From the IMG/VR virus record IMGVR_UViG_3300005613_000001, positions 186,001 to 250,000 of that record: DNA of 64,000 nt; one strand, written 5' to 3'. The position numbers and the translations under genes are program-made. Positions 17,976 to 62,163 of the stretch are shown piece by piece (the first letter of the stretch is position 1; every line of letters starts with the position of its first letter). The notes below the pieces were generated by a model. That model was given only the letters and a program-made list of their open reading frames with translations. It did not search any database and was not told the origin of the DNA.

Positions 17976-19112
17976 TTAATCTTGTTCAACTTTTATAAAC
18001 TTCAATCCTAATCGTTTCGCTTCGCGTTTCCTTACCTTCTTATAGGGGACTCTCTCAGTTATTTCTGAACCCGTTGGTAAGGCATCTCTGTCTATTGTGG
18101 GCAAAAAAGTATTTAACCTCGCAATCACAGAATCAAAAATATTAACGTTCCACAGGGCTGGATTACCCGCCTCTAATATAGTAGTAAAAGAGAAAATATA
18201 TTGCCGTGGCAAGTCATCGTCACAGCAAAGGTCATCCAACTCATATTCTTTGGTTTTAATATACTTATTTCTCTCATTTAATGCAAGAAAAGGAGCCCTT
18301 GCAGCAATAGCAATTCTTGAAAATCCAGAGAAGAAATCCAGAACACAATCCACAGATCGCATCGTACAGGCGATTTTTGACAAATCATGATCAGCCACAT
18401 ATAAACATTGCTGGGCAAAGCGAGATGACAGATCATATGTAGAGTAGTTTTGAACTATAACAGGCACATAGCCTTCTTTGATAAGCCTCTCAATTAAAGC
18501 TACCCAAAAATCTTCTTTGATTGGTGAGGATGTAGGATGCTCTCGCCAAGAATTAGCCACAGTTGTTGGACACACCAATATTTTATATCCAACCCTATTG
18601 GTCATCTTTTTATTGAATTCCGTACCTAAAGAACTAGATGATTGGACCATAGGCAAGAATCGCTCAACATGTCCAAAATTATTTTTAAATTCGTCTGTCA
18701 AACCGCACTCATAATATTCCTTAAATTGCCCAACATCTATTACATCATCAAAAAACTGATTAAGCTTCCTAACATAGACGACCGCCATATCAGCGTTATT
18801 GTCAAACCCTACAGCCGAAGAGTAAAAATGATTTACATTAGGATCAGAAATAGACCAATACTCATCCACATAAGGAAATAAAAATCGATGTCCAGGCCAA
18901 GAACATAAAACAAAGTAACGAGAACCCTTCTTTTCTTCACGGTATCGTTTTAACAACAAAGAAGATAATACAAAAGATGTTTTCAAATCCCCAAAGAACG
19001 GTAGAACCGTAATATTAGAGGGTATTGTGGGGATGTTGTCCTCTTGGAAGGTTTCTCTAACAAAACCACATTTATCAGCCGCTCTCTTTAAAAATTCAGG
19101 TACTTCAATCAT
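17976..19112 (-). CDS. GT9 (heptosyltransferase)-like GT-B glycosyltransferase
   Basis: FWVALIERLIKEGYVPVIV and DCVLDFFSGFSRIAIAARAPFL resemble the GT9 C-terminal lobe. Confidence 0.5.
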   Translation of the reverse strand: MIEVPEFLKRAADKCGFVRETFQEDNIPTIPSNITVLPFFGDLKTSFVLSSLLLKRYREEKKGSRYFVLCSWPGHRFLFPYVDEYWSISDPNVNHFYSSAVGFDNNADMAVVYVRKLNQFFDDVIDVGQFKEYYECGLTDEFKNNFGHVERFLPMVQSSSSLGTEFNKKMTNRVGYKILVCPTTVANSWREHPTSSPIKEDFWVALIERLIKEGYVPVIVQNYSTYDLSSRFAQQCLYVADHDLSKIACTMRSVDCVLDFFSGFSRIAIAARAPFLALNERNKYIKTKEYELDDLCCDDDLPRQYIFSFTTILEAGNPALWNVNIFDSVIARLNTFLPTIDRDALPTGSEITERVPYKKVRKREAKRLGLKFIKVEQD

Positions 19113-20248
19113 CCACCTATCCTCTTTTTGTTCATTTGCCTCAGATATTCTATATGTGACTTGTTCTCCACCATTCCAATTATATCTTCATAATTACCCT
19201 TTTCCATTTCCTTAATACACCGCTCTATCAAAGTTAAAGCACCCTCATGATCATTTAAAACCCTCAGATAATGACAAATCGCCATTTTCATAGGAGCCAA
19301 CCCCTTCAATAAATTGAGGCGATACCCCTCTTGTCCCTCGCCCCAAATTTGCATGGGGCTTTCAAAAAGCAAATAAGGCGTACCCATCAAAGCAGACAGT
19401 CTTGTAGATGCTGTCCAAAACTGAATGGTGAATTCAAGTTTGGCAATAATAGCACAAGTTAGCTCTAAATCACGCGACTCAGGCAGACGAGAGAAGTCCG
19501 TAACATGATCCACAGGGCATGGAAGGGTAGATTGCTTCTCGCCTAGCCAAACAGGGTTGTAGCCCCTAGACTCTAGCAATTCAATTAATTTGACATAAAA
19601 CTCCGGTTGTAAATTACGACCATAAGTTTTACGACCCCTTGCGAATATGCCAACCGACCTGGGCTTTACGTACTTGTCCGCCTCCTCTTGTTTCTCTTTC
19701 GTGGGTTTCGGAATGGGGGTATATTTGTTGCGGTAGTATTTAACATCACCAAACAGTGAGCGAGTTACATTCGTACTATGACAACTTGGGCAATCTTCCA
19801 CATATTTAAGATCAGCCCAAAAATTATTGCATCTCTTGCACTTGTTGCCCACTGCTACCTTGCCCAAATATTGGGAAGGTATAACCTTTCCTTGGGCTTG
19901 CAAAACTTCCTCCAGCTTTTTTAGATTCTTAGAATCGTGATGGAATGCTTTGCAATAATCCCGCAACCATTGGAACTCTTCTTTAATCTCCCAAAACTCA
20001 TCCACTAAATGCCGATAGAAATACTCCCGACCATACCACCCTACGGCTATTTTATAGTCCCCCGCGCGCTCCTGGGCTATCCTGGGAATACAGAACAAAC
20101 ATCCTATGCTTTCACACCCAAATTCAGACAAGCAAGAAATAATGCTAATCTTTCTCTTGTCATCAGGCTTTTCACGATCATTGAACTTAAATACATTAAA
20201 TTTAATATCAACAATCTTTTCCCGAGCCTTAGACCTAATTAATTTCAT
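19109..20248 (-). CDS. GT9-like GT-B glycosyltransferase with a zinc-finger insert
   Basis: RNLQPEFYVKLIELLESRGYNPVWLG; LELTCAIIAKLEFTIQFWTASTRLSALMGTP; CKRC...CPSC insert. Confidence 0.55.
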   Translation of the reverse strand: MKLIRSKAREKIVDIKFNVFKFNDREKPDDKRKISIISCLSEFGCESIGCLFCIPRIAQERAGDYKIAVGWYGREYFYRHLVDEFWEIKEEFQWLRDYCKAFHHDSKNLKKLEEVLQAQGKVIPSQYLGKVAVGNKCKRCNNFWADLKYVEDCPSCHSTNVTRSLFGDVKYYRNKYTPIPKPTKEKQEEADKYVKPRSVGIFARGRKTYGRNLQPEFYVKLIELLESRGYNPVWLGEKQSTLPCPVDHVTDFSRLPESRDLELTCAIIAKLEFTIQFWTASTRLSALMGTPYLLFESPMQIWGEGQEGYRLNLLKGLAPMKMAICHYLRVLNDHEGALTLIERCIKEMEKGNYEDIIGMVENKSHIEYLRQMNKKRIGG

Positions 20249-20439
20249 TTCTTAACCCTGAACATCTTACTGGGAGCCCCACACTTTAAACACCGGAACT
20301 TACGAAGACCACCACAAGTCTTGCAGCTTCTCTTGATTTCTCGGTCAAGAAGCCCCTGCTCCTTCAGATCGCCTTTTATCCCAGTAGTCAAAACTTGATG
20401 TCTACACTTGGGGCATCGAATAATAAAGTTCTTGTCCAT
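20245..20439 (-). CDS. Small zinc-ribbon protein
   Basis: CPKC, CKTC and CLKC motifs. Confidence 0.6.
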   Translation of the reverse strand: MDKNFIIRCPKCRHQVLTTGIKGDLKEQGLLDREIKRSCKTCGGLRKFRCLKCGAPSKMFRVKK

Positions 20440-20466
20440 ACAGAATAGTATAGTAAGATGCGAAGG

Positions 20467-21546
20467 CTAAACTTTAATCATGCGAATAATTCGCTTGATT
20501 TCCTTCTTGTTGATCGTTTGCCACATCTCGCTCTTGATATCCTCATCCTCATCTTCCTCAATAGCAAGGCCCTCAATACTATAGCGATAGGAGCCCTTTC
20601 CCTCTCTACCGCCTCCGCCTCCAATTTTTCTCTCTTTAAATCCGAGGCGGGCACAAATCTCATTCATATCTAAAGAGGCATTAATAGACCGTATAGAGCC
20701 AACAATTTGCCTTCCATCAACTACAGCAAAACAAACTGCTGTTTCTACCCCCACCCAAGAAATCATTTCATCTGCTACATCGGCAATTAAATTAAAATGC
20801 TTCTCCGGCAAAAGTCCGACACCCACTACGGCGATTCCATCCTCATCAATTACTGCCTCTTTAGAAGCTTCAGCTTTACGGTCAATCCAAAATTTGGGGC
20901 GCTTGAACTTTATAATTTCCTTAAGGGCTTTATCATTTCTAAACTCAAACAGCCGCCAATAACCCTCAAATTCATGCTCAGTGCAAGAATCCGCTAAAAG
21001 CCCATCTGTGTCGGTGGCAATACCCACCATTAACCCTGTGGCGACTTTACTATCCGCATCGTTATCATCCTGAAATTCATATCCATACGCCCTAATTAAA
21101 CTACACACAGTACCACAACAACTACCATTTTTAAGGTTCACTGACAAACCTTTGAACCCGCCATTAGGCAGAATCTTGTGGTGGTCAATCACAACATCAA
21201 ACTTAGGCTTATGACTACCCAAACCTGCATGGTCTGCTTCAGGGATACAATCCACCATAATACAATGTTGATAGTCGGTGGGGTTATACTCTTCCACTGG
21301 CTTCATATTAGGGTCTAGCAAATTGCACATTGCCCTATTTTGAGGGTGGCTAATTGTTCCCTCGTAGAATCCATCAACTTCAACCTTTAGCTTCCCAAAT
21401 AGCCACTCTAATCCCATCATTGTGCCAATGGCATCAGGATCAGGCATATGGTGTGTGAATACCGCTATCTTATCGCCACCCTTAACGGTGCCTTGCCATG
21501 TCTTAAACTTTTCCACAAATTGTGGTGATGTTGCAATCTCAGCCAT
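20467..21546 (-). CDS. DHH/DHHA1 phosphoesterase (NrnA-like)
   Basis: THHMPDPDAIG, MVDC, IDHH, GIATDT, GSIRS, GGGGG motifs. Confidence 0.85.
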   Translation of the reverse strand: MAEIATSPQFVEKFKTWQGTVKGGDKIAVFTHHMPDPDAIGTMMGLEWLFGKLKVEVDGFYEGTISHPQNRAMCNLLDPNMKPVEEYNPTDYQHCIMVDCIPEADHAGLGSHKPKFDVVIDHHKILPNGGFKGLSVNLKNGSCCGTVCSLIRAYGYEFQDDNDADSKVATGLMVGIATDTDGLLADSCTEHEFEGYWRLFEFRNDKALKEIIKFKRPKFWIDRKAEASKEAVIDEDGIAVVGVGLLPEKHFNLIADVADEMISWVGVETAVCFAVVDGRQIVGSIRSINASLDMNEICARLGFKERKIGGGGGREGKGSYRYSIEGLAIEEDEDEDIKSEMWQTINKKEIKRIIRMIKV

Positions 21547-25684: not shown

Positions 25685-26152
25685 TTCAGGTTCTATAACT
25701 TTCGTTTCAATCACTGTTCCATTTCCTAAATCATCTACACTATCAACAAACTGGTCAAGGTTTTTCATTTCAATGAGACTCCAATGAGGATCATCTTCAG
25801 GGACATTCTCTGGTTTCGTCCAATAAAACTGCTCGAATTTATATTTATAGATTTTTTCAGCTACATCTTCCACCGACATGCCGGAATGTAAATCTTCCGC
25901 CATTTCTCCACACACCCTCAATGAATCACCTTCAACAGCGCCTCCTAATTTTCTCAGCAAGATAGCACATTCTTGAGCTTTATACGTATTCACCAGCAAA
26001 TTAAGAATATCGCGTTTTAAGTTGCCATCTACGAATTCAACAATAGCCGTATACTTAGCCATTGTTTGCCCTCGCTCGGGCTTATGATTTCTATTCACTT
26101 CAAAAAAGTGTTCATGAAAATTAGATTCATCAATTATCAGTTCTTCTGTCAT
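25661..26152 (-). CDS. Hypothetical protein
   Basis: Probable ATG at 26152 (MTEELIIDE), with GGAG upstream inside the dnaE 3' end. Confidence 0.55.
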   Translation of the reverse strand: MTEELIIDESNFHEHFFEVNRNHKPERGQTMAKYTAIVEFVDGNLKRDILNLLVNTYKAQECAILLRKLGGAVEGDSLRVCGEMAEDLHSGMSVEDVAEKIYKYKFEQFYWTKPENVPEDDPHWSLIEMKNLDQFVDSVDDLGNGTVIETKVIEPESEVPEGS

Positions 26153-28991
26153 TATTTTCTCCCCATTCCATAACGAACACACGGCTATCTCTCTCTTTGG
26201 GAGGTAGCATATGTCGCTTATGTCTTTGTGGGCTATCTAGTGTATATCCAAATTTAGTAGGCGGTTGAACCCTAATACGTAAAAGGTTAGCGCCTGTGAA
26301 TTCTTCTTCAAATCGTTCCCAATCATTGGCCCAGACAGTTACATATTGTCTTTCTCCATTACCATCTTCAACCCATATATTATAATTAAACCCCTTACCA
26401 TTTTTCCAATCTCTTTTTTTATGAGATACAACAACCACTTCTACAGGGCCAACAGTAGCACCATCCCGCATTTCTAACCGTAATTGAGAAAATGTGCAAC
26501 CTGTATAATCTGGGCTTTTCTCTAAAGGGTGGTTCCAAATGAATCCCAGATACTTAGTCTCCGCCGATTCAGGGGAAGTATAGATTTCTTCTAATTCTTT
26601 TGGAATATAAGTATCATCACTTGTAGGATCAAATTTATCAAATGTGAATGGATTTTCGTCTGCTTCCGCCTCTTTTTTAAGATATCCTTTGATGGATCTT
26701 TCTCGTTTGCCCCATAAAGTCTTTAATCTTTTCCATTTATTCAGATTCTTCTTTTGAACTTTCCCATATTTAGGACCAGGAGTGCGACATACTTCCTCAA
26801 CAATGTCATCTTCATCAAACAATTGTTGCCACAATTCTAAATTAGACTCATCAAACGTTGCCAATTCATCATGGTCAGCAAGTATTTCTTTCAACTCACT
26901 ATCATACCTATCCAAAGTTTTCTGGTATCTCTTCCCACGATCTATCCTATTTTTCTCCGCAGCCTTAAAGTTTTCGTAATATTTATACAATGTAACGGGA
27001 TCGCCCTCATCAAAAAGATTAAGACCCAAAAGCGGCTTGATAACTGTGGCATCTGTACCAAAGAATCTTAAGAACTGTTCAAGAGATGCATAGGGCTGTC
27101 CTTGAACAATTTTCTCAGCATTTGACTCACCCACCCCTTTGATATTTGAAAGTCCAAAATAAATCTTATCATCAGGCGAAGGCTCTTCATTCTCTTGGAT
27201 GATTGCAAATCTCACATTTGATTTACTAATATTGACTGGCTCTACGGGGATATCATGAATTACCGCCTCAGTTTTATACTCTCTAATTTTGTCCTCTTTT
27301 GTTTCACAGCTTAGAATACCAGCGTAGAATTCAAGTGGGTAATGGGCTTTTAGCCAAAGAAGTCTTGAGCTTACATAAGTGTAGGCTACCGCGTGGCTTT
27401 TGTTAAATCCATAAGCCGCGAATGCTTCAATTTGATCCCATAGGAATCTAGTATTTGCTGCTGCGGCTGTTTGGTGGATATTTTCTTTTGTGAGTTTGGA
27501 CGGATATTGAAGTTTATACAAATAAGCAACGTATCCCAGAGATTTAGCGTAAGCATTCTCCATACCTTCATAAAATGCATAATTCGCCACTTCTCGTTCT
27601 AATTCTTCAAATGAATCTTTATGGAGTCCAATCAGAGGCGTAACAACTTCTTTTGCATCTTTCGGGATTTCGGGCTCACAATCACGTACTAATATTTTAG
27701 CCCCATTTTCAAGAAACATCTCTTTATACTTACCAAAAATCTCAACCTTCTTCTTACTAATAGCCTTTCTCACTTTTTCAGTGTGACTATCAGGAACCCC
27801 ACCAATATATTGGAGAACCTTCATAACCTGTTCTTGATAAGCCATTACCCCGTAGGTATTCCCTAGAATACTTTCCATAGCTGGGTGTATCGTATATGGT
27901 TCTTCTCCCTTCTTTCTTTTTACATACTTCTCCGCCATGCCCATTCCCAACGGACCAGGGCGATATAAGGCTGTGTACGCTACCAAATCATCGAAACTTG
28001 TAACGCCTCCTTGTTTTACCAATGATCTTATTCCAGGGGAATCAAATTGGAACACGCATTTTAAATCCCCCTTGTTTGCCATTGCAATCGCTTTGGCATC
28101 ATCTAGATAAGCCGTATCTGACCAATCCCGTTGTCCAGGTAATGCGCAGATTGAATCCAAACCATGACGAGCTTTCACTAATTGACAAATTCTACCAATT
28201 TGTTCCAAGTTCGTAATTACAAGAAGATCAAATTTTACCAGACCCAATGGCCCAAGCTCCTGTGCATTCAATCCCTCAACAAAGGCAGAGGTAATTTGTT
28301 CAGCCCTATCAACCACAAGGGGAACAAAATTACCAAGAGGTTTATTAGAAATAATCAAACCCGCAGCATGCTTGCCCATGCTCTTATTGCGATTTGTGAG
28401 CTTTCTAGCCGCATTGTAAATATCAGGATTCGCTTCACAAAACTCTGCAAGGGCAGGATTTAATCGCAGTGCGTCTTCCCAAGTAACCGCATCACCCTCT
28501 TCATCTTTATCTACTAAATATTTGGTAATTGCCACCATTTCATCCCGACTCTTACCATAAACCTTAGCAATATCAATAAGAGAGCTACGCATACCAAACG
28601 TATTATAACTGCCGATATTGCAAACCCGTTCTGGACCGAAGGCATTAGGTGCCCATTCCTCCTTCAAATAATCTCGTATTGTCTTGTGGAAGTCTACATC
28701 TACATCAGGCATATCCCCATCAAATTCAAAAACAGGCTTCTCATTAATATCAAAATCAGGAACCAAATTTAAAAGATAAGCTACCAAGAGATTGTTTTGA
28801 TTAACAGGATAACGGATTTTCTTTTCTTGAAACTCATCGTATAAATCAACAAAATATTGAGCTTCATTCTTGGTTTTTATAGCCTTAATCTCCTCAGACA
28901 ATCGCCCCTTGTGTAGATCATCCTCTAAACCCCGCCTCTTTAAAGCGCTAGCACACAAATAAATCAGTCTATCTTGGTAGTTCATAAGCAT
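26130..28991 (-). CDS. dnaE: DNA polymerase III alpha (DnaE), C-terminal catalytic polypeptide of a split enzyme
   Basis: MPDVDVDF catalytic motif, GKHAAGLII, KFDLL, VFQFDS, ALYRPGP, YQEQVM, YGFNKSHA, GLSNIKGVG, C-terminal OB fold; no PHP domain; start probably 28991 or 28985. Confidence 0.92.
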   Translation of the reverse strand: MLMNYQDRLIYLCASALKRRGLEDDLHKGRLSEEIKAIKTKNEAQYFVDLYDEFQEKKIRYPVNQNNLLVAYLLNLVPDFDINEKPVFEFDGDMPDVDVDFHKTIRDYLKEEWAPNAFGPERVCNIGSYNTFGMRSSLIDIAKVYGKSRDEMVAITKYLVDKDEEGDAVTWEDALRLNPALAEFCEANPDIYNAARKLTNRNKSMGKHAAGLIISNKPLGNFVPLVVDRAEQITSAFVEGLNAQELGPLGLVKFDLLVITNLEQIGRICQLVKARHGLDSICALPGQRDWSDTAYLDDAKAIAMANKGDLKCVFQFDSPGIRSLVKQGGVTSFDDLVAYTALYRPGPLGMGMAEKYVKRKKGEEPYTIHPAMESILGNTYGVMAYQEQVMKVLQYIGGVPDSHTEKVRKAISKKKVEIFGKYKEMFLENGAKILVRDCEPEIPKDAKEVVTPLIGLHKDSFEELEREVANYAFYEGMENAYAKSLGYVAYLYKLQYPSKLTKENIHQTAAAANTRFLWDQIEAFAAYGFNKSHAVAYTYVSSRLLWLKAHYPLEFYAGILSCETKEDKIREYKTEAVIHDIPVEPVNISKSNVRFAIIQENEEPSPDDKIYFGLSNIKGVGESNAEKIVQGQPYASLEQFLRFFGTDATVIKPLLGLNLFDEGDPVTLYKYYENFKAAEKNRIDRGKRYQKTLDRYDSELKEILADHDELATFDESNLELWQQLFDEDDIVEEVCRTPGPKYGKVQKKNLNKWKRLKTLWGKRERSIKGYLKKEAEADENPFTFDKFDPTSDDTYIPKELEEIYTSPESAETKYLGFIWNHPLEKSPDYTGCTFSQLRLEMRDGATVGPVEVVVVSHKKRDWKNGKGFNYNIWVEDGNGERQYVTVWANDWERFEEEFTGANLLRIRVQPPTKFGYTLDSPQRHKRHMLPPKERDSRVFVMEWGENNDRRTDN

Positions 28992-29031
28992 AAATATAAT
29001 TGATTCTCTATAAATCGTCAAGGGAGACAAT

Positions 29032-29793
29032 ATGAAACGAGCATTATTAGTTGGTATAAATAATTACCAGGAACCAGGAAGTGATTTGTCAGGCTGTTTA
29101 AACGATGTGGCATTCATGCAAGCCCATATTCGCAAATATGGATTTGAAGAAATGCAAACGCTTAAAAACAGCCAAGCAACTAAGAACAATATATTGACCG
29201 CACTCACCAATTTAGTTGATAGTTCCGAGGCGGGAGATAAAATTCTATATTACCACAGCGGTCACGGAACTCGCGTGGTAGATGGCTTTGATGGAGATGA
29301 AACAGACAGCATGGATGAATGCCTTGTCTCCTACGATCACGATTGGATGGAACCGCTTCGTGACGACCTTATTGCCAAAGCAATCAGTGGCATCCACCCA
29401 AAAGCACGCCTCTATTTAATTATAGACACCTGCCACAGCGGGACTATCACTGATATTATATCAAATGGGAAAATAAAATCTATCCCAATGCCACCAGAAA
29501 TGGAAGAATATGCTTTACGAAAGGAATTAAAAGTCAAAAGAGATGTTCGCCCTAAAACATTAAACCATATTCTTTTATCAGGATGCAAACCCCATGAATA
29601 CAGCTATGAAGCAGTAGTAGATGGGAAAATCAGAGGATTAATGACATGGGGTTTTATTAAAACCACACAGCGAAGAAAGCCCTGGAATAGAGTGATTTCA
29701 GCCGTTAGAAAACAAGTTACCAGACAACAACCAGGACAGCATCCTGTGTTGGCGGGGAAACCTAGACTTAGAAAAGAATTAATATTTAAGTAA
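29032..29793 (+). CDS. Caspase-family (C14, metacaspase-like) cysteine protease
   Basis: KRALLVGINNY, LSGCLND, YHSGHG and DTCHSG His-Cys dyad. Confidence 0.88.
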   Translation: MKRALLVGINNYQEPGSDLSGCLNDVAFMQAHIRKYGFEEMQTLKNSQATKNNILTALTNLVDSSEAGDKILYYHSGHGTRVVDGFDGDETDSMDECLVSYDHDWMEPLRDDLIAKAISGIHPKARLYLIIDTCHSGTITDIISNGKIKSIPMPPEMEEYALRKELKVKRDVRPKTLNHILLSGCKPHEYSYEAVVDGKIRGLMTWGFIKTTQRRKPWNRVISAVRKQVTRQQPGQHPVLAGKPRLRKELIFK

Positions 29794-33898: not shown

Positions 33899-33931
33899 TG
33901 TGTACAGATATCTACCGTTATTAACGGCATT

Positions 33932-35005: not shown

Positions 35006-35076
35006 TGTACCACGCTCTCCTTACGGTACATTTTTGACCTCCCACAATAAGTTGCCAATCCATTGATGTTAATTCC

Positions 35077-35105
35077 ATTGTAAGAGATGTAGTGGGTTAT
35101 GTCAA
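35077..35105 (-). promoter_or_regulatory. Sigma-70-type promoter for the phage sigma gene
   Basis: TTGACA-17 nt-TACAAT on the minus strand. Confidence 0.7.
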
Positions 35106-35344: not shown

Positions 35345-35348
35345 TGAT

Positions 35349-38389: not shown

Positions 38390-38418
38390 AAAATCCACCA
38401 ATAATTTTGGTGGATTTT
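38390..38418. terminator. Intrinsic terminator hairpin downstream of tmRNA
   Basis: AAAATCCACCA / TGGTGGATTTT inverted repeat flanked by A/T tracts. Confidence 0.75.
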
Positions 38419-42113: not shown

Positions 42114-43244
42114 ATGAAGGTACTAGTATCAGGCTGCTTCGATCTAATCCACAGCGGCCATATCCAATTTCTTAAAGAAGCCGCTGAATACGGCGATCTA
42201 TATGTCTCCATTGGATCAGATCAAACAATCCAAGAACTAAAAAATAGAACTCCCATCTATAACGAGCAAGAACGCCTCTTTATTATGGAGTCTATCAAAT
42301 ATATTAAAAAAGCTTTTATCGCTCAGGGGTCTGGGACACTAGATTTCTTAAACGAATTAAAACAATTAAAGCCAGGGGCGTTTGTGGTCAATTCTGATGG
42401 TCATTCCCAAGAAAAGGAAGACCTGTGCAAAGAGCTAAAAATTAAATATATTGTCCTCAATCGGTCCCCCTACAAAACTCTTCCCGCTCGCAGTACATCA
42501 AAATTGCTTGGCGAAATAGAAATGCCCTATCGTATTGATTTGGCAGGAGGCTGGCTGGATCAACCGTGGGTTTCCAATATGGGGCACGGGCCTGTTATCA
42601 CCATCTCATTAGAAGCCTCACATATTTTCTTTAGAAGAAGCGGAATGGCTACCTCCACCAGAGAAAAAGCCATTAAATTATGGGGCTCTGGGATTCCTTA
42701 TGGTGACTACGAAGAAAATGCAAAACTCCTATTTTCTTATGATAATTTCCCCGATAAAGAGTTTGTTTCTGGTTCTCAAGATACATTGGGAATTGTCATG
42801 CCAGGAGTTAATAAATTAGACTATTCCGGTAAGTATTGGCCGGAAGCTATAGAGTCTATTGTAGATGATGACACTGCGCGTTGGTTAGAAGACCACATTC
42901 GCTTAGTCCCCTTATATCCAAGACCAAAAGACTATTCTGTGCTGTCCAATACCAATATTAAAGAAGAATATGTTAGAGGTTTAGCCTTCAATGCCCACAA
43001 AGTTTGGAAAGCAATTGAATTAAAACATGCCAGCATGTTAGGGCTACACGTAGAAAAGTGTTTCGGTGCCCAAGTGGCTATGTTCCCCAATATGATAACT
43101 CATAGAATAGCCAAAATAATCAAAAAATACAGAAATAAAATATTGGGAGTTAAAATATCAGGGGCGGGTGGGGGCGGATATCTAATCTTCATCACCGATC
43201 AAGATATAGAAAATTCAATTAAAATTAAAGTGAGAACTCAATAA
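42114..43244 (+). CDS. Cytidylyltransferase-like nucleotidyltransferase fused to a GHMP sugar kinase (HddA-like)
   Basis: SGCFDLIHSGH (HIGH motif); RIDLAGGWLD, RSGMATS, SGSQD, KISGAGGGG. Confidence 0.85.
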   Translation: MKVLVSGCFDLIHSGHIQFLKEAAEYGDLYVSIGSDQTIQELKNRTPIYNEQERLFIMESIKYIKKAFIAQGSGTLDFLNELKQLKPGAFVVNSDGHSQEKEDLCKELKIKYIVLNRSPYKTLPARSTSKLLGEIEMPYRIDLAGGWLDQPWVSNMGHGPVITISLEASHIFFRRSGMATSTREKAIKLWGSGIPYGDYEENAKLLFSYDNFPDKEFVSGSQDTLGIVMPGVNKLDYSGKYWPEAIESIVDDDTARWLEDHIRLVPLYPRPKDYSVLSNTNIKEEYVRGLAFNAHKVWKAIELKHASMLGLHVEKCFGAQVAMFPNMITHRIAKIIKKYRNKILGVKISGAGGGGYLIFITDQDIENSIKIKVRTQ

Positions 43245-49612: not shown

Positions 49613-49626
49613 TTCCTTGTCCTTTT

Positions 49627-49690
49627 AAAAAAAGGGCGTGATCTCTCTGTATAATCAAGGATGAAATATAAAAATCGAGAGACCACGCCC
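49627..49690 (-). terminator. Large-loop hairpin with a U7 tract between prkA and yeaH
   Basis: GGGCGTG.TCTCTC / GAGAGA.CACGCCC stem followed by TTTTTTT on the minus strand. Confidence 0.55.
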
Positions 49691-49699
49691 AAACCCTAT

Positions 49700-56601: not shown

Positions 56602-56831
56602 CAAATTTCCCGCTGTGGGACGTAGGGCGCGTAGAAATAGCCCATATCAAGATAAGATGGACCCCTATAACTCCCAAATAGCCCAGGATAGCTATGTACG
56701 CCACATTCACGACTGCTCTCGCCCCACGTCGGCCAAACGCCACATTGGGGCACGCGGGTAAGATTAGGAAGATCCTCAGGATTAAATTGCATCATAGATG
56801 CAACATATAATTTAGCTGGCTTCTTCGACAT
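56601..56831 (-). CDS. Hypothetical protein
   Basis: 76-aa ORF overlapping the HD gene end. Confidence 0.35.
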   Translation of the reverse strand: MSKKPAKLYVASMMQFNPEDLPNLTRVPQCGVWPTWGESSRECGVHSYPGLFGSYRGPSYLDMGYFYAPYVPQREI

Positions 56832-57801
56832 AATGTTTCATCCCAATACTAGCGAAATACCAATCCTTATAGATATCAAAAGAATCTCTAAGCGGCTGGC
56901 CTAATTTCACATTTTCTTTGAGGCGAGCTTCTATTTTACCATTCCTGCTACTTATCAAATCTACGGCGCTCAAAATAGTCGCCTCTTGTGATTGTGTCGG
57001 CTTATAGCTTCCCCATTCAATTTTACCATGATGAGATGCTATCAAATGAATAACTTCATTAATGAAATCTTGTTCTAAACCCTCACTCTCACCTACACTC
57101 TTAACCAATTCCATTCCATAGAAAATGTGACCAATGGACTGCTCAGTAGCCAATTGATCTGCTAATCCCGCCTCTGTAATAAAATAGGTTTCAACTTTAC
57201 CTATATCGTGCAATATAGCTCCTGCGTATAGGACATCCCTATTGATGAAGCCATATGGTTCCTTACAACTTTCGTAAATCACCCTACATAAATCTAAAAC
57301 CTCAGCGGTGTGGACCAACAAACCGCCTGAATAATTATGATGAATTGTAGAGGCGGCGGGGCAGGACATCAACTTCTTTCTGTCCAGTTTAGAAAGGCAT
57401 TTATTCACAAAGTTATAGTGTTTCTCATCATCCCACAGGCTCTTATCAGAAATCAACTTCAAAGCCCATTTAAGCCGTTCAGGGTCAGCTTTTGGGAATT
57501 CGCAAAGTTCTTTCTCATCTTCAGGCAAGTCTTCTTTTGATATCCTATCAAAGCCAAGCGGAGAAATTACAATACTCTTATGGGTGGCTAGTTGATCTTT
57601 GAATTTGTTAATTCTGATTACATCATTCACATGGGGATAGTCGGGGTCTTTAGCCGCCTCTTTGTGTGCATCCCACATGTTTGCTTTAATTTGACCAGAA
57701 TTAGTCTTTATAAGCAAAGCATAGTAAAATCTATCCCCAGCTTTAGTAGGGCGAATACCTGTCTCTAACACCAGGGCATATAAGGGAGTTGGTAGAGCCA
57801 T
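56812..57801 (-). CDS. YhaM/Cbf1-like OB-fold + HD-domain nuclease
   Basis: IKANMWD OB region, HHNYSGGLLVHT, LHDIGKV, GHIFYG, SHHG. Confidence 0.8.
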   Translation of the reverse strand: MALPTPLYALVLETGIRPTKAGDRFYYALLIKTNSGQIKANMWDAHKEAAKDPDYPHVNDVIRINKFKDQLATHKSIVISPLGFDRISKEDLPEDEKELCEFPKADPERLKWALKLISDKSLWDDEKHYNFVNKCLSKLDRKKLMSCPAASTIHHNYSGGLLVHTAEVLDLCRVIYESCKEPYGFINRDVLYAGAILHDIGKVETYFITEAGLADQLATEQSIGHIFYGMELVKSVGESEGLEQDFINEVIHLIASHHGKIEWGSYKPTQSQEATILSAVDLISSRNGKIEARLKENVKLGQPLRDSFDIYKDWYFASIGMKHYVEEAS

Positions 57802-57868
57802 TATTTCTTTTCCATGAATACCTTGTTAAAATCAATCCACGTTTCTTGTAACGCTTTTTGCCCGTTCC

Positions 57869-59062
57869 TCAAAACCTACCAAAATCTAACAGTGCTAAAT
57901 TTTGCGTTTGATTCTCACTTCTCCGACGACCACCTGTTGTCAAAACAACATGAACCTTATCATCTCCATGAGCGTTGATTTCCGTCGAACTGACGGTATT
58001 TTTTAGATTACATGCAGCATTTAAGTCTCGATCCATCTCAAGACCACAGCTACACTTGTATGTTCTCTCGGATAGTTTCAAGTCTTTCTTGACCTTGCCA
58101 CAACCCGAACACATCTTACTTGAAGGAAAGAACCGATCCACAAACCTAACCTCAATACCAGACCAACCAGCCTTGTATTCCACCTGCCTACGAAACTCTC
58201 GCATGTTGGCATCGTGAATAGCTTTTGCTAAATTATGGTTTTTGGTCATGCCGCTTACATTCAGATTTTCCATCACAATGATCTGAGGTTGCTTGGTTTT
58301 TACAATCTCTGAACTTGCTTTGTGAGTGGCATCTTTCCTAATGTTCACGACCCGTCGCCACAACCTTGCGATCTTCGTTCGTAGTTTCTTTCTTCGCTTG
58401 CTTTTCTTGTCTATCTTCTTTGCCAGCCTTCGCTGAAAGTATTTGATCTTGCTTTCCAGCTTGGATAATGCTTTGGGATTATCATATTGGCTTCCATCAG
58501 AAGTGGTTGCCAACGTCTTGATGCCCAAGTCGATCCCCAATACATCACCTGTATTTTTATGTTCTTCAACTTCCTCACGAACCAGAACCGAGACATACCA
58601 GCGACCCGCTTGCTCGCTCACCGTTACTGACAAAATGTGTTGGTCAGTTGGGATATATCCCACTTCTTTCAATCTAAGCCAACCGAGTCTCGGTAACTTG
58701 ATTCGTTTGTTTTCAACTTTGATTGATCCAGTCAAACGGAAAGAGCCGATGCCTTTGTTTCTGGACTTGAACTTAGGGAATCCTGCTCGCTTCTCAAAGA
58801 AGTTCTTGAACGCCGTCTGTAAGTCTCTGAGGCTTTCCTGCATCGCACACTTGGAAACCTCATACATGAAGGCAAATTGTCCCTTTTTCTCCACATTGAG
58901 TTCTCGGTGCAGTTGCATGGCGTTTGGCTTAGACTCTTTCTCTTGGATGCGTCCTAACGCCCAATTCCAAGCCTTTCTCGCACAACCAGCGTTCTTCATC
59001 AGCAAAGTGCGTTGCTTATTATTTGGATCAAGTTCTGTTTTGTAAGCCTTCTGGATCAACAT
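57869..59062 (-). CDS. tnpB: TnpB RNA-guided endonuclease
   Basis: KAYKTEL, FPKFKS, GIDLG, VMENL, DRDLNAA RuvC residues; CSGC...CSC zinc finger. Confidence 0.95.
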   Translation of the reverse strand: MLIQKAYKTELDPNNKQRTLLMKNAGCARKAWNWALGRIQEKESKPNAMQLHRELNVEKKGQFAFMYEVSKCAMQESLRDLQTAFKNFFEKRAGFPKFKSRNKGIGSFRLTGSIKVENKRIKLPRLGWLRLKEVGYIPTDQHILSVTVSEQAGRWYVSVLVREEVEEHKNTGDVLGIDLGIKTLATTSDGSQYDNPKALSKLESKIKYFQRRLAKKIDKKSKRRKKLRTKIARLWRRVVNIRKDATHKASSEIVKTKQPQIIVMENLNVSGMTKNHNLAKAIHDANMREFRRQVEYKAGWSGIEVRFVDRFFPSSKMCSGCGKVKKDLKLSERTYKCSCGLEMDRDLNAACNLKNTVSSTEINAHGDDKVHVVLTTGGRRRSENQTQNLALLDFGRF

Positions 59063-59703
59063 GCAGCCTCCTGCTGTTGTTGTTCCAGCAACTTCTTTTG
59101 CTTTCTTATCTCGGCTGAACGTCTCCCGTATATGCGATTACTGAATGAAGACATGAGCGAAAGCATATCTTCAACAAGTTCTGCCTCATAACTCTTGCCT
59201 AAGACTTCGCCAATCCATTCGATCTCAACATCATGGCTGGAAAAGAACTGATTGAGAAAGTCAAAGTTGAAACGAGTCAAACGGTCTTTATGCTCAACTA
59301 CAACCTTGTCAATTTCTCTTTTGGAAACCAGCTTGAATAGTTGCTTGAGTTTAGATCGGGTATCACACATGCCCGATCCCACTTCCTCAAACGATTTTAC
59401 AACATGGTATCCTTGTTTCGCACAATAGGTCAGGACTCGCCCGTTCTGTCGTTCTAGGTCGCCCTTCTGCTTTTGTTCGTGAGAACTGACTCTGCAATAG
59501 CTGGCTACTCGAATTATATCTTTCTTTTTCTGTTTTTGGTATTCACCACAGAGTTTTTGAATGTCGGTCAAGCGATACCTGCGGTGATTTCCACAGGTCT
59601 TGACTGCTTCCAGTTTACCTTCTTCATCCCAAGTTCTCAGAGTATTGATATGGACTCCGAGTAAGTCTGCGGCTTTACCGATGCTCAATAGTTTCTGGTT
59701 CAT
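59056..59703 (-). CDS. tnpA: IS607 TnpA serine recombinase
   Basis: MerR-type HTH (SIGKAADLLGVHINTLRTWD), YCRVSS, VVEHKDRLTRF, ELVEDM; start ATG 59703. Confidence 0.93.
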   Translation of the reverse strand: MNQKLLSIGKAADLLGVHINTLRTWDEEGKLEAVKTCGNHRRYRLTDIQKLCGEYQKQKKKDIIRVASYCRVSSHEQKQKGDLERQNGRVLTYCAKQGYHVVKSFEEVGSGMCDTRSKLKQLFKLVSKREIDKVVVEHKDRLTRFNFDFLNQFFSSHDVEIEWIGEVLGKSYEAELVEDMLSLMSSFSNRIYGRRSAEIRKQKKLLEQQQQEAAC

Positions 59704-59869
59704 TCTCCAATAGTTCCTTTTCACGGAACACATGGAGCCATTCATCGTATTGTTTCTGAAACTCCTCAACTGTGGGAACTTCATCAAGTTCAAACATCAT
59801 AGGATGGACAGTGCCATCTGCTGTTTCAAACTCAGTTTTGGTTACTTTGACGATTTTTCGGCTCAACAT
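59675..59869 (-). CDS. Small acidic ORF upstream of tnpA inside the IS
   Basis: GAGAGG RBS; TACATA box at 59889-59894; overlaps the tnpA start. Confidence 0.55.
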   Translation of the reverse strand: MLSRKIVKVTKTEFETADGTVHPMMFELDEVPTVEEFQKQYDEWLHVFREKELLENEPETIEHR

Positions 59870-59956
59870 AATGTGTTTCCTCTCTTTATATGTAGTATCA
59901 TACCTACAATTTTCATTTAGAAAAAGTCAGATTTTGTGAGATTTTCTGGCAACTGT

Positions 59957-60610
59957 TCACAACCCTTCCAATGGCGGCTTTTTTGCCATTGTAATTTTTC
60001 GCTTGCTTATTGATTCGGGTGAGGGCTTTTTGCCTAAATGAGACAATCTAATTTTATTTTTAGTTTCTTCAGAAAACACCTTCCCTAAATGCCTTAATCT
60101 AATTCTTTCTTTAGTCTCTTTTGAATGTTTTCGCCCGAGTTGGCATTGTCTCCTTCGCTCTCTTACACTGCATGGGGTTCCAAACTCTTTAAATCTCTTT
60201 TTTTGAGAATTGCTTTGTTTTAATTTAGATTCAGTTGTCCAAACTCGTTTTTTATTCGCATTGCCTATTTTAATCTTTGTTTCATCACTTCGCTTCATGC
60301 CAAGACAACTACCGCCTGCGGTTGGTTGCATATTATAACAATTCCCCCAAACTTCATTAATCCAATATTGTTCTCGATCATCTAGCTCCCCAATATCACA
60401 AACTTCTTCTAATATAAAAAACTCAAAATTATCACCACCATATTTATTCCAAGCTCTTTGTAGGTGTTTGTTGTAATGAGAGCCCTTAATCAATAATCTT
60501 TTATGTTCCAAAAAACGACCCTCCACTCCCTTTTTGCCATTCACCTGCCCAACGTACATCTTATTATTTACTTTGTTTTTTATCCCGTATATTCCCTGTG
60601 TCTTTTTCAT
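59957..60610 (-). CDS. GIY-YIG homing endonuclease with NUMOD3 repeats
   Basis: GIYGIKN...MYVGQ, HYNKHLQRAWNKYG, E...N catalytic residues, four G.K.S.E(T/S) repeats. Confidence 0.9.
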   Translation of the reverse strand: MKKTQGIYGIKNKVNNKMYVGQVNGKKGVEGRFLEHKRLLIKGSHYNKHLQRAWNKYGGDNFEFFILEEVCDIGELDDREQYWINEVWGNCYNMQPTAGGSCLGMKRSDETKIKIGNANKKRVWTTESKLKQSNSQKKRFKEFGTPCSVRERRRQCQLGRKHSKETKERIRLRHLGKVFSEETKNKIRLSHLGKKPSPESISKRKITMAKKPPLEGL

Positions 60611-60761
60611 AAATCATCTCCAGATCAGAAACCCTATATCTTCTGTGCCCTCCGATTGTGCGAAGTGGGGCGAGTTTGCCATTCTTATCCCAATTTCTCA
60701 AAGTGGTCGTAGTGACTCCTAACATTGAAGCCGCTTTTTTTATAGACACAATTTCTTCCAT
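60564..60761 (-). CDS. Stand-alone MerR-type HTH similar to the IS607 TnpA N-domain
   Basis: SIKKAASMLGVTTTTLRNWDKNGKL...GGHRRY; start ATG 60761. Confidence 0.75.
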   Translation of the reverse strand: MEEIVSIKKAASMLGVTTTTLRNWDKNGKLAPLRTIGGHRRYRVSDLEMIYEKDTGNIRDKKQSK

Positions 60762-60780
60762 AATATTATATAGTAACACT

Positions 60781-62163
60781 TTATAGGTTTTTATAAGATT
60801 TTACAACTTTTTCAATAATTTGGGTTGTAGAAACACCTTCCACTAATGGGGCATAATAGAACTCCTTAGCCAATTCAGCAGAGCGGGGTCGTTTTATACC
60901 TTCACCCTTTACGAGCACATCAGGCTGAATTTCCTTATACAAGTTATAAGGACTTTCAGTTTTAAAAGGAAGTACAAAATCTACACACTCTAAGGAAGCA
61001 ATTAAATTTAATCTCTGTTCTAAAGGTACAACAGGTCGATTTTCGCCCTTTAGCTTTTTAACACTTTCATCAGAATTTATTAAAACAGCCAACTTATCCC
61101 CTTTTGATTTAGCAAATTGAAAAGAAGCAACATGCCCATAATGCATAAGATCAAATACGCCATTCGAACACACTAATTTAAAATCTCTATTCATCAGATC
61201 GTGGGGGTCCACAAATTTTGTTTCAACAAGCTCATAAGGATATATGGGCTTATTGTATTCCATCTGGACATAAACAGCACCAGCCCTATAGGCAATTTCA
61301 ACAGCTTCAACTAAAGAGAAATTATGAGCTATTGCTAGAGCTAAATGGGACACAAATGAGTCTCCCGCCCCAATTACACTGGTTACTTCTGTGGAGAGAT
61401 TGGGGCGGTATGAAAATGTCTTTCCATCTATTGACATCCCCATCACACCACACCCGCCATAAGTTGTTACAATATTACTTCCACCTAACTTTTCAGCCAA
61501 TCTCTGACATTGGAAATCAGGGTCTTTTACATCTGTAAATCGTTCTGCTTCGACAGAATTAGGCTTAAAAACCGAACACCCTATCCATTTCTCAATAGGT
61601 TCATCTTTGGGATCAACTATAGTTTTAACGCCATGCGTATGACAAATTGTAATGATCTCTTGTGTAAACTTAAAATCATTAAAAAGCCCCTTGCCATAAT
61701 CACTTAAAATTGCTAATTCAAACGCATTTTTCCTAATCCCCTCTTCAAAAACCTCAAGCAACCGCCTGCGGTCATCATGATCTATCACAAATTGACTTGT
61801 TTCAATATCCCATCTAATTAAATTTTGACCATCTTGAAATCGTTTTTTGATTGGAATTCTATTAGATGTGATAACAGGATCAATATTTAGATGATGTAAA
61901 ACATTTAAATCCTTCTGGGAGAGCAACCCAAATAATGTGTATTCCACATTCCAGTTCTTAAACTGGTGTGCTACATTTGCCGCACCACCAGGAACTACTT
62001 GAATGGGTTCGTCATCATTTGACCGCATAACGGGGATTGGGGCCTCGGGTGAAATCCTTTTTACATCCACCTTGTAATACTCATCAATCATTAGGTCGCC
62101 CAAAATGGCTATACGAGGCGATCTTAAACGGTTATCTGTAAGGTATTGTGCTATTATGCTCAT
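60781..62163 (-). CDS. hldE: Bifunctional heptose-7-phosphate kinase / heptose-1-phosphate adenylyltransferase
   Basis: GDLMIDEY, RISPEAPIPV, PGGAANVA, SDYGKG, GAGDSF; NGVFDLMHYGH, NSDESVKKLKG.NRP, STTQII. Confidence 0.92.
   Translation of the reverse strand: MSIIAQYLTDNRLRSPRIAILGDLMIDEYYKVDVKRISPEAPIPVMRSNDDEPIQVVPGGAANVAHQFKNWNVEYTLFGLLSQKDLNVLHHLNIDPVITSNRIPIKKRFQDGQNLIRWDIETSQFVIDHDDRRRLLEVFEEGIRKNAFELAILSDYGKGLFNDFKFTQEIITICHTHGVKTIVDPKDEPIEKWIGCSVFKPNSVEAERFTDVKDPDFQCQRLAEKLGGSNIVTTYGGCGVMGMSIDGKTFSYRPNLSTEVTSVIGAGDSFVSHLALAIAHNFSLVEAVEIAYRAGAVYVQMEYNKPIYPYELVETKFVDPHDLMNRDFKLVCSNGVFDLMHYGHVASFQFAKSKGDKLAVLINSDESVKKLKGENRPVVPLEQRLNLIASLECVDFVLPFKTESPYNLYKEIQPDVLVKGEGIKRPRSAELAKEFYYAPLVEGVSTTQIIEKVVKSYKNL

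What the first reader, a model, noticed from the sequence alone, without database searches (positions are those of the whole stretch)
17976..62163. Phage-encoded nucleotide-heptose pathway with two GT9-like transferases
Seen: full HldE (kinase + adenylyltransferase), a second nucleotidyltransferase fused to an HddA-like GHMP kinase, and tandem GT9-like genes. Established: HldE makes the beta-anomer route to ADP-heptose and HddA the alpha route to GDP-heptose; GT9 enzymes transfer heptose. Inference: the phage may make both activated heptoses, either to remodel host LPS (superinfection exclusion) or to heptosylate its own virion proteins. gmhA, gmhB and hldD are not in this window.
Basis: partly seen in the sequence, partly recalled or inferred. 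Interest (0 to 1): 0.6.

Follow-up and report, generated by a model that had tools for sequence, protein, structure and literature searches.

The report
Huge-phage ADP-heptose genes and GT9-fold pair
A 527-kb uncultured phage carries genes that look able to make the activated sugar ADP-heptose, plus several heptosyltransferase-like enzymes. Two of these are a very divergent tandem pair shared across its whole clade, but the proposed second (GDP-heptose) route is not supported and the target of the sugar is unknown.

Summary

- **HldE-like gene (60781-62163, minus strand).** It is a full-length HldE-like kinase/adenylyltransferase with intact motifs. It is conserved in 10-11 of 12 related huge phages.
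- **HldD-like epimerase.** One lies elsewhere in the genome. gmhA and gmhB are absent from the genome, and gmhA from all 12 related records, so the heptose-7-phosphate and the phosphatase step would have to come from the host.
- **Link between this pair and heptose.** It is not shown. The better-linked consumers are three or four canonical GT9 genes outside the window, whose relatives sit next to hldE or hldD in related phages.
- **Nucleotidyltransferase-GHMP fusion (42114-43244).** It is a recent acquisition of a widespread Bacteroidota-type protein. It is absent from five relatives, has no HddC-type domain and no link to gmhA/gmhB. The GDP-heptose idea is not supported.

The acceptor (virion protein, host envelope or something else) remains inferred.

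The parts
60781..62163 (-). HldE-like bifunctional sugar kinase (PfkB) / nucleotidyltransferase, 460 aa
   Evidence: Pfam PfkB plus CTP_transf_like. NF008454 242.8 bits, TIGR02198 168.5 bits, TIGR02199 123.3 bits, all below their equivalog cut-offs. Best PDB sequence matches are HldC 5x9q (E 2e-20) and HldA 4e84 (E 2e-17). The R-I-S-P-E and GAGD motifs and the second His of HxGH are invariant, and the first His is at least 90% conserved, in 25 clade members. Full-length orthologs occur in 10-11 of 12 related huge-phage records.
19109..20248 (-). GT9-fold protein A, 379 aa, core gene of the phage clade
19781..19840 (-). Four-cysteine (zinc-ribbon-like) insert in the N-lobe of protein A (C137, C140, C153, C156)
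   Evidence: All four cysteines are invariant in 34 sequences. The insert is absent from paralog B in the profile alignment.
17976..19112 (-). GT9-fold protein B, 378 aa, distant paralog of A
42114..43244 (+). Cytidylyltransferase-like nucleotidyltransferase fused to a compact GHMP-type kinase, 376 aa; sugar unknown
   Evidence: Domain hits. The HxGH-type motif and the GHMP glycine-rich motif are visible in the translation. More than 7,990 homologs; every listed hit that carries a taxon name is Bacteroidales, at 53-58% identity. Absent from 5 related huge phages.
62937..63722 (-). DXD-type glycosyltransferase (Caps_synth / Gly_transf_sug), 261 aa, close to hldE
   Evidence: Pfam PF05704 E 2e-8 and PF04488 E 3e-8.
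62240..62935 (+). Possible sulfotransferase, 231 aa, between hldE and the DXD glycosyltransferase (weak)
   Evidence: PF00685 E 1.7e-4, 21.5 bits against a cut-off of 22. No NCBIfam hit.

Best explanation
The window is part of a complete-looking 527-kb huge-phage genome that carries a broad glycan toolkit.

Proposed pathway: the HldE-like enzyme phosphorylates host-made D-glycero-D-manno-heptose 7-phosphate at C1. After a host GmhB-type phosphatase acts, HldE adenylylates the heptose 1-phosphate. A phage HldD-like epimerase, encoded outside the window, then converts ADP-D,D-heptose to ADP-L,D-heptose. The phage's GT9 enzymes spend this donor on a heptose-containing glycan attached to a macromolecular acceptor, most plausibly a phage or cell-envelope component.

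Tandem pair A/B: these are very divergent, clade-core, translationally coupled GT9-fold paralogs. I infer that they act together as one glycosyltransferase, with A (many invariant polar residues and a four-cysteine finger) as the main catalytic or substrate-recognising subunit. Their donor may be ADP-heptose.

Fusion: the nucleotidyltransferase-GHMP protein is a separate, recently acquired Bacteroidota-type 'kinase then nucleotidyltransferase' enzyme. It activates some other sugar or polyol, not the alpha-heptose/GDP route.

Shown: domain architectures, motifs, folds, paralogy, synteny, co-occurrence, and the absence of gmhA/gmhB.
Inferred: substrates, A/B partnership, acceptor.
For: - HldE-like architecture and heptose-specific best matches; catalytic motifs invariant across the clade.
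- HldD-like gene at genome 383409-384305 (TIGR02197 224 bits; 35% identity to E. coli RfaD, E 1e-42). Orthologs above 210 bits occur in 6 of 12 records.
- Canonical PF01075 GT9 genes: 4 in this genome (3 over the cut-off), and present in 10 of 12 relatives.
- In relatives these GT9 genes lie beside hldE or hldD. In G006 the GT9_c ortholog is at 35087-35974 and hldE at 33699-35054. In G004 a GT9 is at 365976 and hldD at 367782. G005, G009 and G010 have them within about 5 kb.
- A and B have the GT9 fold with a clear margin over other GT-B families.
- A and B are paralogs, have overlapping stop and start codons, and are adjacent in 61 of 62 loci.
- hldE lies at a similar distance from A/B in relatives (24-42 kb), so both belong to the conserved core region.
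- hldE is close to a DXD glycosyltransferase.
Against: - HldE, HldD and the canonical GT9s all score below the NCBIfam equivalog cut-offs, so the substrate could be a related sugar.
- No gmhA or gmhB in the genome, and no gmhA in any of 12 related records, so the pathway depends on an unknown host.
- A and B do not match GT9 at sequence level (hhalign probability 1.8% and 48.6%). The WaaC D261 position aligns to Trp in A.
- A/B are never adjacent to hldE or hldD.
- The A/B complex prediction could not be run.
- No acceptor has been identified. The position of one GT9 beside the tail sheath gene is not conserved in relatives.
Confidence: 0.55

Rival explanations
1. The A/B pair has nothing to do with heptose. 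It is either a GT-B enzyme pair using another donor, or a non-catalytic structural or scaffolding pair that only keeps the GT9 fold. The HldE/HldD product is used solely by the canonical GT9 genes elsewhere in the genome.
For: - No sequence-level GT9 match.
- B has only 5 invariant residues.
- GT9-fold chloroplast NDH subunits (9grx_1, 7wff_a, 7f9o_6) score as high as WaaC.
- A/B sit in a conserved block with DNA polymerase III alpha, a DHH phosphoesterase and peptide deformylase, not with sugar genes.
- Canonical GT9s, not A/B, are the genes found next to hldE/hldD in relatives.
Against: - A has about 65 invariant positions rich in Asp, Glu, Arg and His, in a family that is 53-74% identical among the listed hits, as expected of an enzyme.
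- B keeps a Gly-Asp at the position of the WaaC Gly12-Asp13 loop; D42 is at least 90% conserved (positional reading by eye).
- hldE co-occurs with A/B in 10-11 of 12 records.
Confidence: 0.3
2. The heptose genes serve DNA hypermodification. Heptose would be transferred to a hydroxymethylated base in phage DNA by a GT-B enzyme, as shown for a metagenomic phage cluster that makes 5-heptosyl-methylcytosine.
For: - Precedent: a phage cluster of kinase/phosphatase, cytidylyltransferase and a GT-B DNA glycosyltransferase puts one or two heptoses on 5hmC (bioRxiv 10.1101/2023.12.21.572611).
- A/B lie among replication genes. A is basic (pI 9.0) and carries a zinc-ribbon-like insert.
Against: - No Tet/JBP dioxygenase in the genome.
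- The only thymidylate-synthase homolog is an ordinary ThyA (TIGR03284 241 bits, above the cut-off of 108), with DHFR beside it.
- No hydroxymethylase was detected.
- T4 beta-glucosyltransferase is not among the listed fold matches of A or B.
Confidence: 0.07
3. The genes remodel the host's lipopolysaccharide inner core, for superinfection exclusion or receptor masking, in the manner of WaaC/WaaF.
For: - The canonical phage GT9s have WaaF, WaaC or WaaQ as their best named matches and WaaF 1psw as best PDB sequence match.
- The host must already make heptose 7-phosphate, because the phage lacks gmhA.
- Heptosyltransferase I has been reported as an auxiliary gene in a wastewater huge phage (PMC10747093).
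Against: - All scores are far below the equivalog cut-offs (46 against 134.6 bits).
- A host that already makes heptose 7-phosphate for LPS would normally have its own HldE/HldD.
- hldE and A/B are core genes across a diverse clade rather than variable accessory genes.
- The host is unknown; the fusion gene's named homologs are all Bacteroidales.
Confidence: 0.15
4. The nucleotidyltransferase-GHMP fusion is a compact HddA-HddC analog that makes an alpha-linked NDP-heptose, so the phage makes two activated heptoses.
For: - HddA is a GHMP kinase of the same subgroup as fucokinase (from established knowledge).
- The fusion's nucleotidyltransferase domain also hits the RfaE domain II model (54.9 bits).
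- The kinase-plus-nucleotidyltransferase logic parallels HldE.
Against: - No GHMP_kinases_N hit anywhere in the genome.
- The nucleotidyltransferase is not HddC-type, and the HddC model matches only the RmlA-like gene, at 37 bits.
- Bacterial homologs sit beside MurA, MurB and an iron alcohol dehydrogenase, or in an O-antigen-type locus beside GT11 and Wzy, never beside gmhA/gmhB.
- The closest homolog lies in a phage-like contig with LicD genes.
- Absent from 5 relatives that keep hldE.
Confidence: 0.08

Closest known systems
E. coli ADP-L-glycero-beta-D-manno-heptose pathway (GmhA, HldE, GmhB, HldD) with WaaC/WaaF
   Same: Same two-domain HldE architecture with conserved kinase and nucleotidyltransferase motifs. 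An HldD-like epimerase 35% identical to RfaD. Canonical GT9 genes in the same genome.
   Different: gmhA and gmhB are missing. All scores are below the equivalog cut-offs. The genes are scattered over a 527-kb phage genome. The acceptor is unknown and probably not Kdo2-lipid A.
Cyanophage (T4-like) split rfaE-like kinase and nucleotidyltransferase genes
   Same: Phage-borne HldE-related genes annotated as auxiliary metabolic genes; 27-30% identical to the window protein.
   Different: In cyanophages the two domains are separate neighbouring genes next to carbamoyltransferase or halogenase genes. Here they are fused, and the protein belongs to a distinct huge-phage clade (best hit 40% identity, in the 595-kb uncultured phage LR756511).
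TibC/AAH bacterial autotransporter heptosyltransferases (BAHT)
   Different: A has no N-terminal beta-barrel. Its cysteine finger is in the N-lobe, not the C-lobe. B has none. There is no sequence similarity.
Phage 5hmC-heptose DNA hypermodification cluster (contig 53 of bioRxiv 10.1101/2023.12.21.572611)
   Same: Phage-encoded kinase plus cytidylyltransferase-type nucleotidyltransferase plus GT-B transferase that installs heptose.
   Different: That system needs a C5-methyltransferase and a TET-like oxidase, and its transferase resembles T4 beta-glucosyltransferase. This genome has no TET-like gene, has an ordinary ThyA, and its transferases resemble GT9.
Chloroplast NDH subunits with a GT9 fold (chains 9grx_1, 7wff_a, 7f9o_6)
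   Different: These are non-enzymatic complex subunits. They show that the GT9 fold alone does not prove transferase activity.

Membership tests
HldE (bifunctional heptose 7-phosphate kinase / heptose 1-phosphate adenylyltransferase) | N-terminal PfkB kinase fused to a C-terminal cytidylyltransferase-like domain, aligned end to end with the family model | tested here: met
   Pfam domains at residues 54-300 and 334-425. NF008454 aligned over 13-455 of 460 residues.
HldE (bifunctional heptose 7-phosphate kinase / heptose 1-phosphate adenylyltransferase) | Score at or above the curated equivalog cut-off | tested here: not met
   242.8 bits against 521 (NF008454), 168.5 against 345 (TIGR02198), 123.3 against 181.5 (TIGR02199).
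HldE (bifunctional heptose 7-phosphate kinase / heptose 1-phosphate adenylyltransferase) | Catalytic motifs: N-terminal R-I-S-P-E segment, GAGD of the kinase, HxGH of the nucleotidyltransferase | tested here: met
   Aligned with HldA 4e84 and HldC 5x9q. R36, S38, P39, E40, G265-D268 and H344 are invariant and H341 is at least 90% conserved in 25 clade members.
HldE (bifunctional heptose 7-phosphate kinase / heptose 1-phosphate adenylyltransferase) | Activity on D-glycero-D-manno-heptose phosphates | not testable with these tools
   Needs an enzyme assay or complementation of an hldE mutant.
Complete ADP-heptose pathway | GmhA isomerase and GmhB phosphatase present | tested here: not met
   No SIS_2, TIGR00441 or TIGR01656 match in the 527-kb genome. 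No SIS_2 match in 12 related records.
Complete ADP-heptose pathway | HldD ADP-heptose 6-epimerase present | tested here: met
   Genome 383409-384305(-): TIGR02197 224.3 bits (cut-off 274.6), E 2e-66. 35% identity to E. coli RfaD, E 1e-42.
CAZy GT9 / Pfam PF01075 (proteins A and B) | Sequence match to the family model | tested here: not met
   No PF01075 hit for either protein. hhalign against an alignment of WaaC, WaaF and three phage GT9s gives probability 1.8% (A) and 48.6% (B).
CAZy GT9 / Pfam PF01075 (proteins A and B) | GT-B fold closest to solved GT9 structures | tested here: met
CAZy GT9 / Pfam PF01075 (proteins A and B) | Catalytic and donor-binding residues equivalent to WaaC Asp13, Lys192 and Asp261 (the roles of these residues are recalled from the WaaC literature, not checked here) | tested here: inconclusive
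   Low-confidence profile alignment puts A R211 at K192 and A W278 at D261. B has a Gly-Asp at the Asp13 loop by eye. No residue-level structural superposition was available.
CAZy GT9 / Pfam PF01075 (proteins A and B) | Use of ADP-heptose as donor | not testable with these tools
   Needs biochemistry.
HddA/HddC GDP-heptose (alpha) route (the fusion protein) | HddC-type NTP_transferase (PF00483) domain | tested here: not met
   The fusion carries PF01467, not PF00483. The only PF00483 gene in the genome is RmlA-like (193.5 bits), with the HddC model at 37 bits.
HddA/HddC GDP-heptose (alpha) route (the fusion protein) | HddA-type GHMP kinase linked to gmhA/gmhB | tested here: not met
   Only GHMP_kinases_C at 21.8 bits, with best match fucokinase. 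No GHMP_kinases_N in the genome. No gmhA/gmhB next to homologs in four contexts.
BAHT (TibC/AAH protein heptosyltransferases) | N-terminal beta-barrel, beta-hairpin thumb and a C-lobe iron finger (PMC4358343) | tested here: not met
Phage DNA sugar-hypermodification clusters | An enzyme that makes a hydroxymethylated base (TET/5mYOX, or a ThyA-like hydroxymethylase) | tested here: not met
   No Tet_JBP match. The single ThyA homolog passes the thymidylate synthase equivalog cut-off.

The most novel reading that the evidence does not exclude
The translationally coupled A/B pair is a previously undescribed heterodimeric GT9-fold heptosyltransferase. It would be core to a whole clade of 340-670 kb phages and would use phage-made ADP-heptose to modify an essential phage macromolecule (virion protein or nucleic acid). 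Heptosylation would then be an obligatory step of the huge-phage life cycle rather than an accessory trait.
Probability: 0.18. Interest if true: 0.75.

Novelty: new variant of a known kind. Interest (0 to 1): 0.5.

Why it matters
Phage-borne rfaE/hldE and heptosyltransferase genes have so far been listed only as auxiliary metabolic genes. Here hldE is a conserved core gene of a clade of very large uncultured phages. It is often accompanied by hldD and by canonical GT9 genes placed next to it, which makes ADP-heptose synthesis by these phages a concrete, testable claim.

The clade also carries a strictly syntenic, highly conserved pair of GT9-fold proteins that no family database recognises. 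If the pair is an active transferase, it defines a new branch of GT9-like enzymes and points to an essential glycosylation step in huge phages.

The consistent lack of gmhA and gmhB also restricts the possible hosts to organisms that make heptose 7-phosphate.

Tried and rejected
- Megablast of 5 kb of the window against GenBank phages: no match.
- The search for related loci with the single HldE and fusion proteins: nothing, because the patterns were too specific. Whole-record searches of relatives were used instead.
No verdict.
- ESM Atlas fold library: not available.
- Profile search of A against PDB sequences: only chance hits.
- Promoter and terminator scans around A/B: no more sites than in shuffled sequence.
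- Sequencing-run search: one marine metagenome run holding 8% of the sampled words. This is too little to name a habitat, and no RNA data were found.
- Literature searches for a characterised cytidylyltransferase-GHMP fusion in Bacteroidota, and for LR756511: nothing.
- The upstream ORF 41077-42096 was considered as a partner of the fusion. It is an acidic low-complexity protein with no family match.
- Tail-sheath glycosylation was considered because one GT9 gene abuts the sheath gene. That adjacency is not conserved in relatives.
- No claim here rests on it.

Full report
**Setting.** The window is bases 186001-250000 of a single 527,112-bp IMG/VR virus record. CheckV estimates it as 100% complete and finds no terminal repeat. 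It has 40.8% G+C, uses the standard genetic code and is about 93% coding. Its only relative among 50,697 GenBank phage records is the 595-kb uncultured phage LR756511. Many further relatives are IMG/VR contigs of 100-570 kb and metagenomic contigs up to about 690 kb. It therefore belongs to a clade of uncultured huge phages. The host is unknown.

**The HldE-like gene.** Window 60781-62163(-) encodes 460 aa with a PfkB kinase domain and a cytidylyltransferase-like domain.
- It aligns over its whole length with the NCBIfam HldE model (242.8 bits, E 6e-72) and with both RfaE domain models, but stays below their equivalog cut-offs.
- Its best matches among solved structures are the two Burkholderia heptose enzymes HldC (5x9q, E 2e-20) and HldA (4e84, E 2e-17). 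Ribokinase and phosphofructokinase lie far behind.
- In 25 clade members the R-I-S-P-E segment, the GAGD motif and the second His of HxGH are invariant, and the first His is at least 90% conserved.
- Full-length orthologs (39-44% identity) occur in 10-11 of 12 related records. The exceptions are one record (69% complete) with no match and one that carries only the nucleotidyltransferase part.
- hldE lies 24-42 kb from the A/B pair in this genome, in LR756511 and in several relatives, so both sit in the conserved core region.

**The rest of the heptose pathway.**
- An HldD-like epimerase lies at genome 383409-384305(-). It scores 224 bits on TIGR02197 (cut-off 274.6) and is 35% identical to E. 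coli RfaD (E 1e-42). Orthologs above 210 bits are present in 6 of 12 records, many of which are incomplete.
- gmhA (SIS_2, TIGR00441) and gmhB-type phosphatases (TIGR01656) are absent from the genome. SIS_2 is absent from all 12 records.
- The isomerase and phosphatase steps must therefore come from the host or from unrecognised enzymes.

**Canonical GT9 genes.**
- PF01075 finds four genes in this genome, all outside the window. Three are about 300 aa (genome 390778-391686, 472620-473615, 358408-359313). The fourth is a 754-aa TPR protein with a sub-threshold GT9-like C-terminus.
- Aligned with WaaC and WaaF, all share Gly12, Lys192 and His266 (WaaC numbering). Two of the three also keep the Asp after the glycine.
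- Relatives carry 2-5 such genes in 10 of 12 records.
- Several of these lie beside hldE or hldD. In G006 the ortholog of the 358-kb gene directly abuts hldE. In G004 a GT9 is 1.6 kb from hldD. In G005, G009 and G010 the distance is under 5 kb.
- This is the best evidence linking the nucleotide-sugar genes to a transferase, and it points to the canonical GT9s rather than to the tandem pair.

**The tandem pair.** Protein A (19109-20248, 379 aa) and protein B (17976-19112, 378 aa) match no family in Pfam, NCBIfam or PHROGs. A profile of A finds nothing in PDB sequences.
- Both give confident AlphaFold models (pLDDT 90.8 and 92.5).
- Foldseek ranks GT9 structures first for both (3tov, WaaC, WaaF, TibC).
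- A and B are homologous (hhalign 98.4%, E 6e-15; 19% pairwise identity).
- B's ATG overlaps A's TGA.
- B follows A in 61 of 62 related loci. Both sit inside a conserved block: DNA polymerase III alpha C-part, coiled-coil protein, metallopeptidase, DHH phosphoesterase, A, B, peptide deformylase.
- A is strongly constrained. It has about 65 invariant positions, and the best 120 of its 970 homologs are 53-74% identical. It carries an invariant C-x2-C ... C-x2-C insert at residues 137-156 that B lacks.
- B has only five invariant residues.
- Neither protein has a hydrophobic segment long enough for a membrane span. A is basic (pI 9.0) and B is mildly acidic.
- Sequence-profile alignment to true GT9s is too weak to map the active site. 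WaaC K192 falls on A R211, and the WaaC D-T-G-L-S-H segment falls on A W-T-A-S-T-R.
- I read the pair as a two-subunit GT9-fold transferase with A as the main functional subunit. That partnership is inferred only from paralogy, translational coupling and synteny. The complex prediction could not be run.

**The fusion.** Window 42114-43244(+) has a cytidylyltransferase-like domain of the TagD / ethanolamine-phosphate / RfaE-II class. It is followed by a compact (about 245 aa) GHMP-type kinase whose only clear matches are the C-terminal motif region and the kinase part of fucokinase Fkp.
- It has more than 7,990 homologs. Every listed hit that carries a taxon name is from Bacteroidales (Dysgonomonas, Prevotella and others), at 53-58% identity. 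Structure neighbours extend to Chloroflexota and Verrucomicrobiota.
- In Dysgonomonas-type genomes it follows an epimerase, MurB, MurA and an iron alcohol dehydrogenase.
- In one large genome it sits in an O-antigen-like locus between a GT11 gene and Wzy.
- Its closest homolog (58% identity) is on a phage-like contig with LicD genes, a PLD protein and a small nucleotidyltransferase. The same PLD / small nucleotidyltransferase / LicD trio exists in this genome at 342.8-345.1 kb.
- Five related huge phages lack the fusion.
- The genome has no GHMP_kinases_N match. Its only NTP_transferase gene is RmlA-like, not HddC-like.
- The fusion is therefore best read as a recently acquired 'anomeric kinase then nucleotidyltransferase' salvage enzyme for an unidentified sugar or polyol. 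The GDP-heptose reading is not supported.

**Wider glycan toolkit.**
- Near hldE are a possible sulfotransferase (62240-62935, sub-threshold) and, beyond it, a DXD glycosyltransferase (62937-63722).
- Beyond the window end lie a DegT aminotransferase, an ATP-grasp enzyme, a methyltransferase and a weak GT-D match.
- Elsewhere there are RmlA-like and RmlB-like genes, and a GT2 next to one GT9.
- Beside the tail sheath genes there is a group of one GT9, a sulfotransferase and a mannosyltransferase-GT4 fusion. This placement suggested virion glycosylation, but it is not conserved in relatives.

**Rivals.**
- DNA heptosylation has a direct precedent. However, this genome has no TET-like enzyme and has an ordinary ThyA with DHFR.
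- LPS remodelling fits the family names. It sits poorly with core-gene status and with the very low equivalog scores.
- A non-heptose or non-catalytic role for A/B cannot be excluded.

**Verdict.** There is a credible, clade-conserved ADP-heptose branch (HldE here, HldD and canonical GT9s elsewhere). There is a new, very divergent GT9-fold core pair of unknown donor and acceptor. And there is an unrelated, recently acquired nucleotidyltransferase-kinase fusion.

Noticed in passing
window 38418-38772 (-): A phage-encoded tmRNA gene (Rfam RF00023, 127 bits, full length). ARAGORN did not call it.
   Followed up: partly
window 44154-45539 (-) and 26130-29030 (-): DNA polymerase III alpha is split into two genes about 15 kb apart. 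One holds the PHP domain and the start of the polymerase core (461 aa). The other holds the rest of the core, the fingers and HhH (966 aa).
   Followed up: no
window 46749-51787 (-): A complete PrkA / DUF444 (YeaH-like) / SpoVR gene trio, a bacterial stress or sporulation-associated operon, carried by the phage. A ClpP protease gene lies next to it at 45965-46690.
   Followed up: no
window 56812-60610 (-): An HD-domain protein (56812-57801), a TnpB/IS605 OrfB-like gene (57869-59062) and a group-I-intron-type homing endonuclease (59957-60610) lie directly downstream of hldE. These are mobile elements in the core region.
   Followed up: no
window 29032-29793 (+), 32302-33171 (-); L089:7863-8597 (-): A caspase-like peptidase C14, a ThiF/E1-like protein and, elsewhere in the genome, a prokaryotic E2 family D protein. 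These could be parts of a ubiquitin-like conjugation system.
   Followed up: no
window 33932-35005 (-), 36722-37507 (-), 16891-17451 (-), 20467-21546 (-): A sigma-70 region 2 protein, a radical SAM protein, a peptide deformylase and a DHH phosphoesterase. The deformylase and the DHH gene flank the A/B pair in most relatives.
   Followed up: partly
window 41077-42096 (+): A 339-aa, highly acidic, low-complexity protein with no family match, immediately upstream of the nucleotidyltransferase-GHMP fusion.
   Followed up: partly
L085:7164-8171 (-) (genome 471164-472171): A strong match to Volactin, an archaeal-type actin homolog (PF25216, E 2e-66), close to one of the canonical GT9 genes.
   Followed up: no
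L095:7218-9652 (-) (genome 375218-377652): A phage-encoded two-component pair: a histidine kinase (509 aa) and a response regulator (293 aa), next to an RmlA-like nucleotidyltransferase (L095:6503-7240).
   Followed up: no
L089:4783-7141 (genome 342783-345141): A PLD-like protein, a small RfaE-II/TagD-like nucleotidyltransferase (142 aa) and a LicD-family phosphotransferase in a row. The same trio sits near the closest homolog of the fusion gene on another phage-like contig, which suggests a CDP-alcohol phosphotransfer module.
   Followed up: partly
L086:4676-12017 (genome 354676-362017): The tail sheath and sheath-stabiliser genes are directly followed by a GT9 gene, a sulfotransferase and a 666-aa mannosyltransferase-GT4 fusion. 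The adjacency to the sheath is not conserved in relatives.
   Followed up: partly
L094:3735-12211 (genome 249735-258211): Just past the window end: GMP reductase/IMPDH-like, DHFR, an ordinary ThyA, then a DegT sugar aminotransferase, an ATP-grasp enzyme, a methyltransferase and a weak GT-D match.
   Followed up: partly
G001:C1:211858-212319 (-): In the 572-kb relative with terminal repeats, the hldE position holds a 332-aa ORF that matches only the nucleotidyltransferase half. The kinase half is missing or unrecognisable.
   Followed up: no
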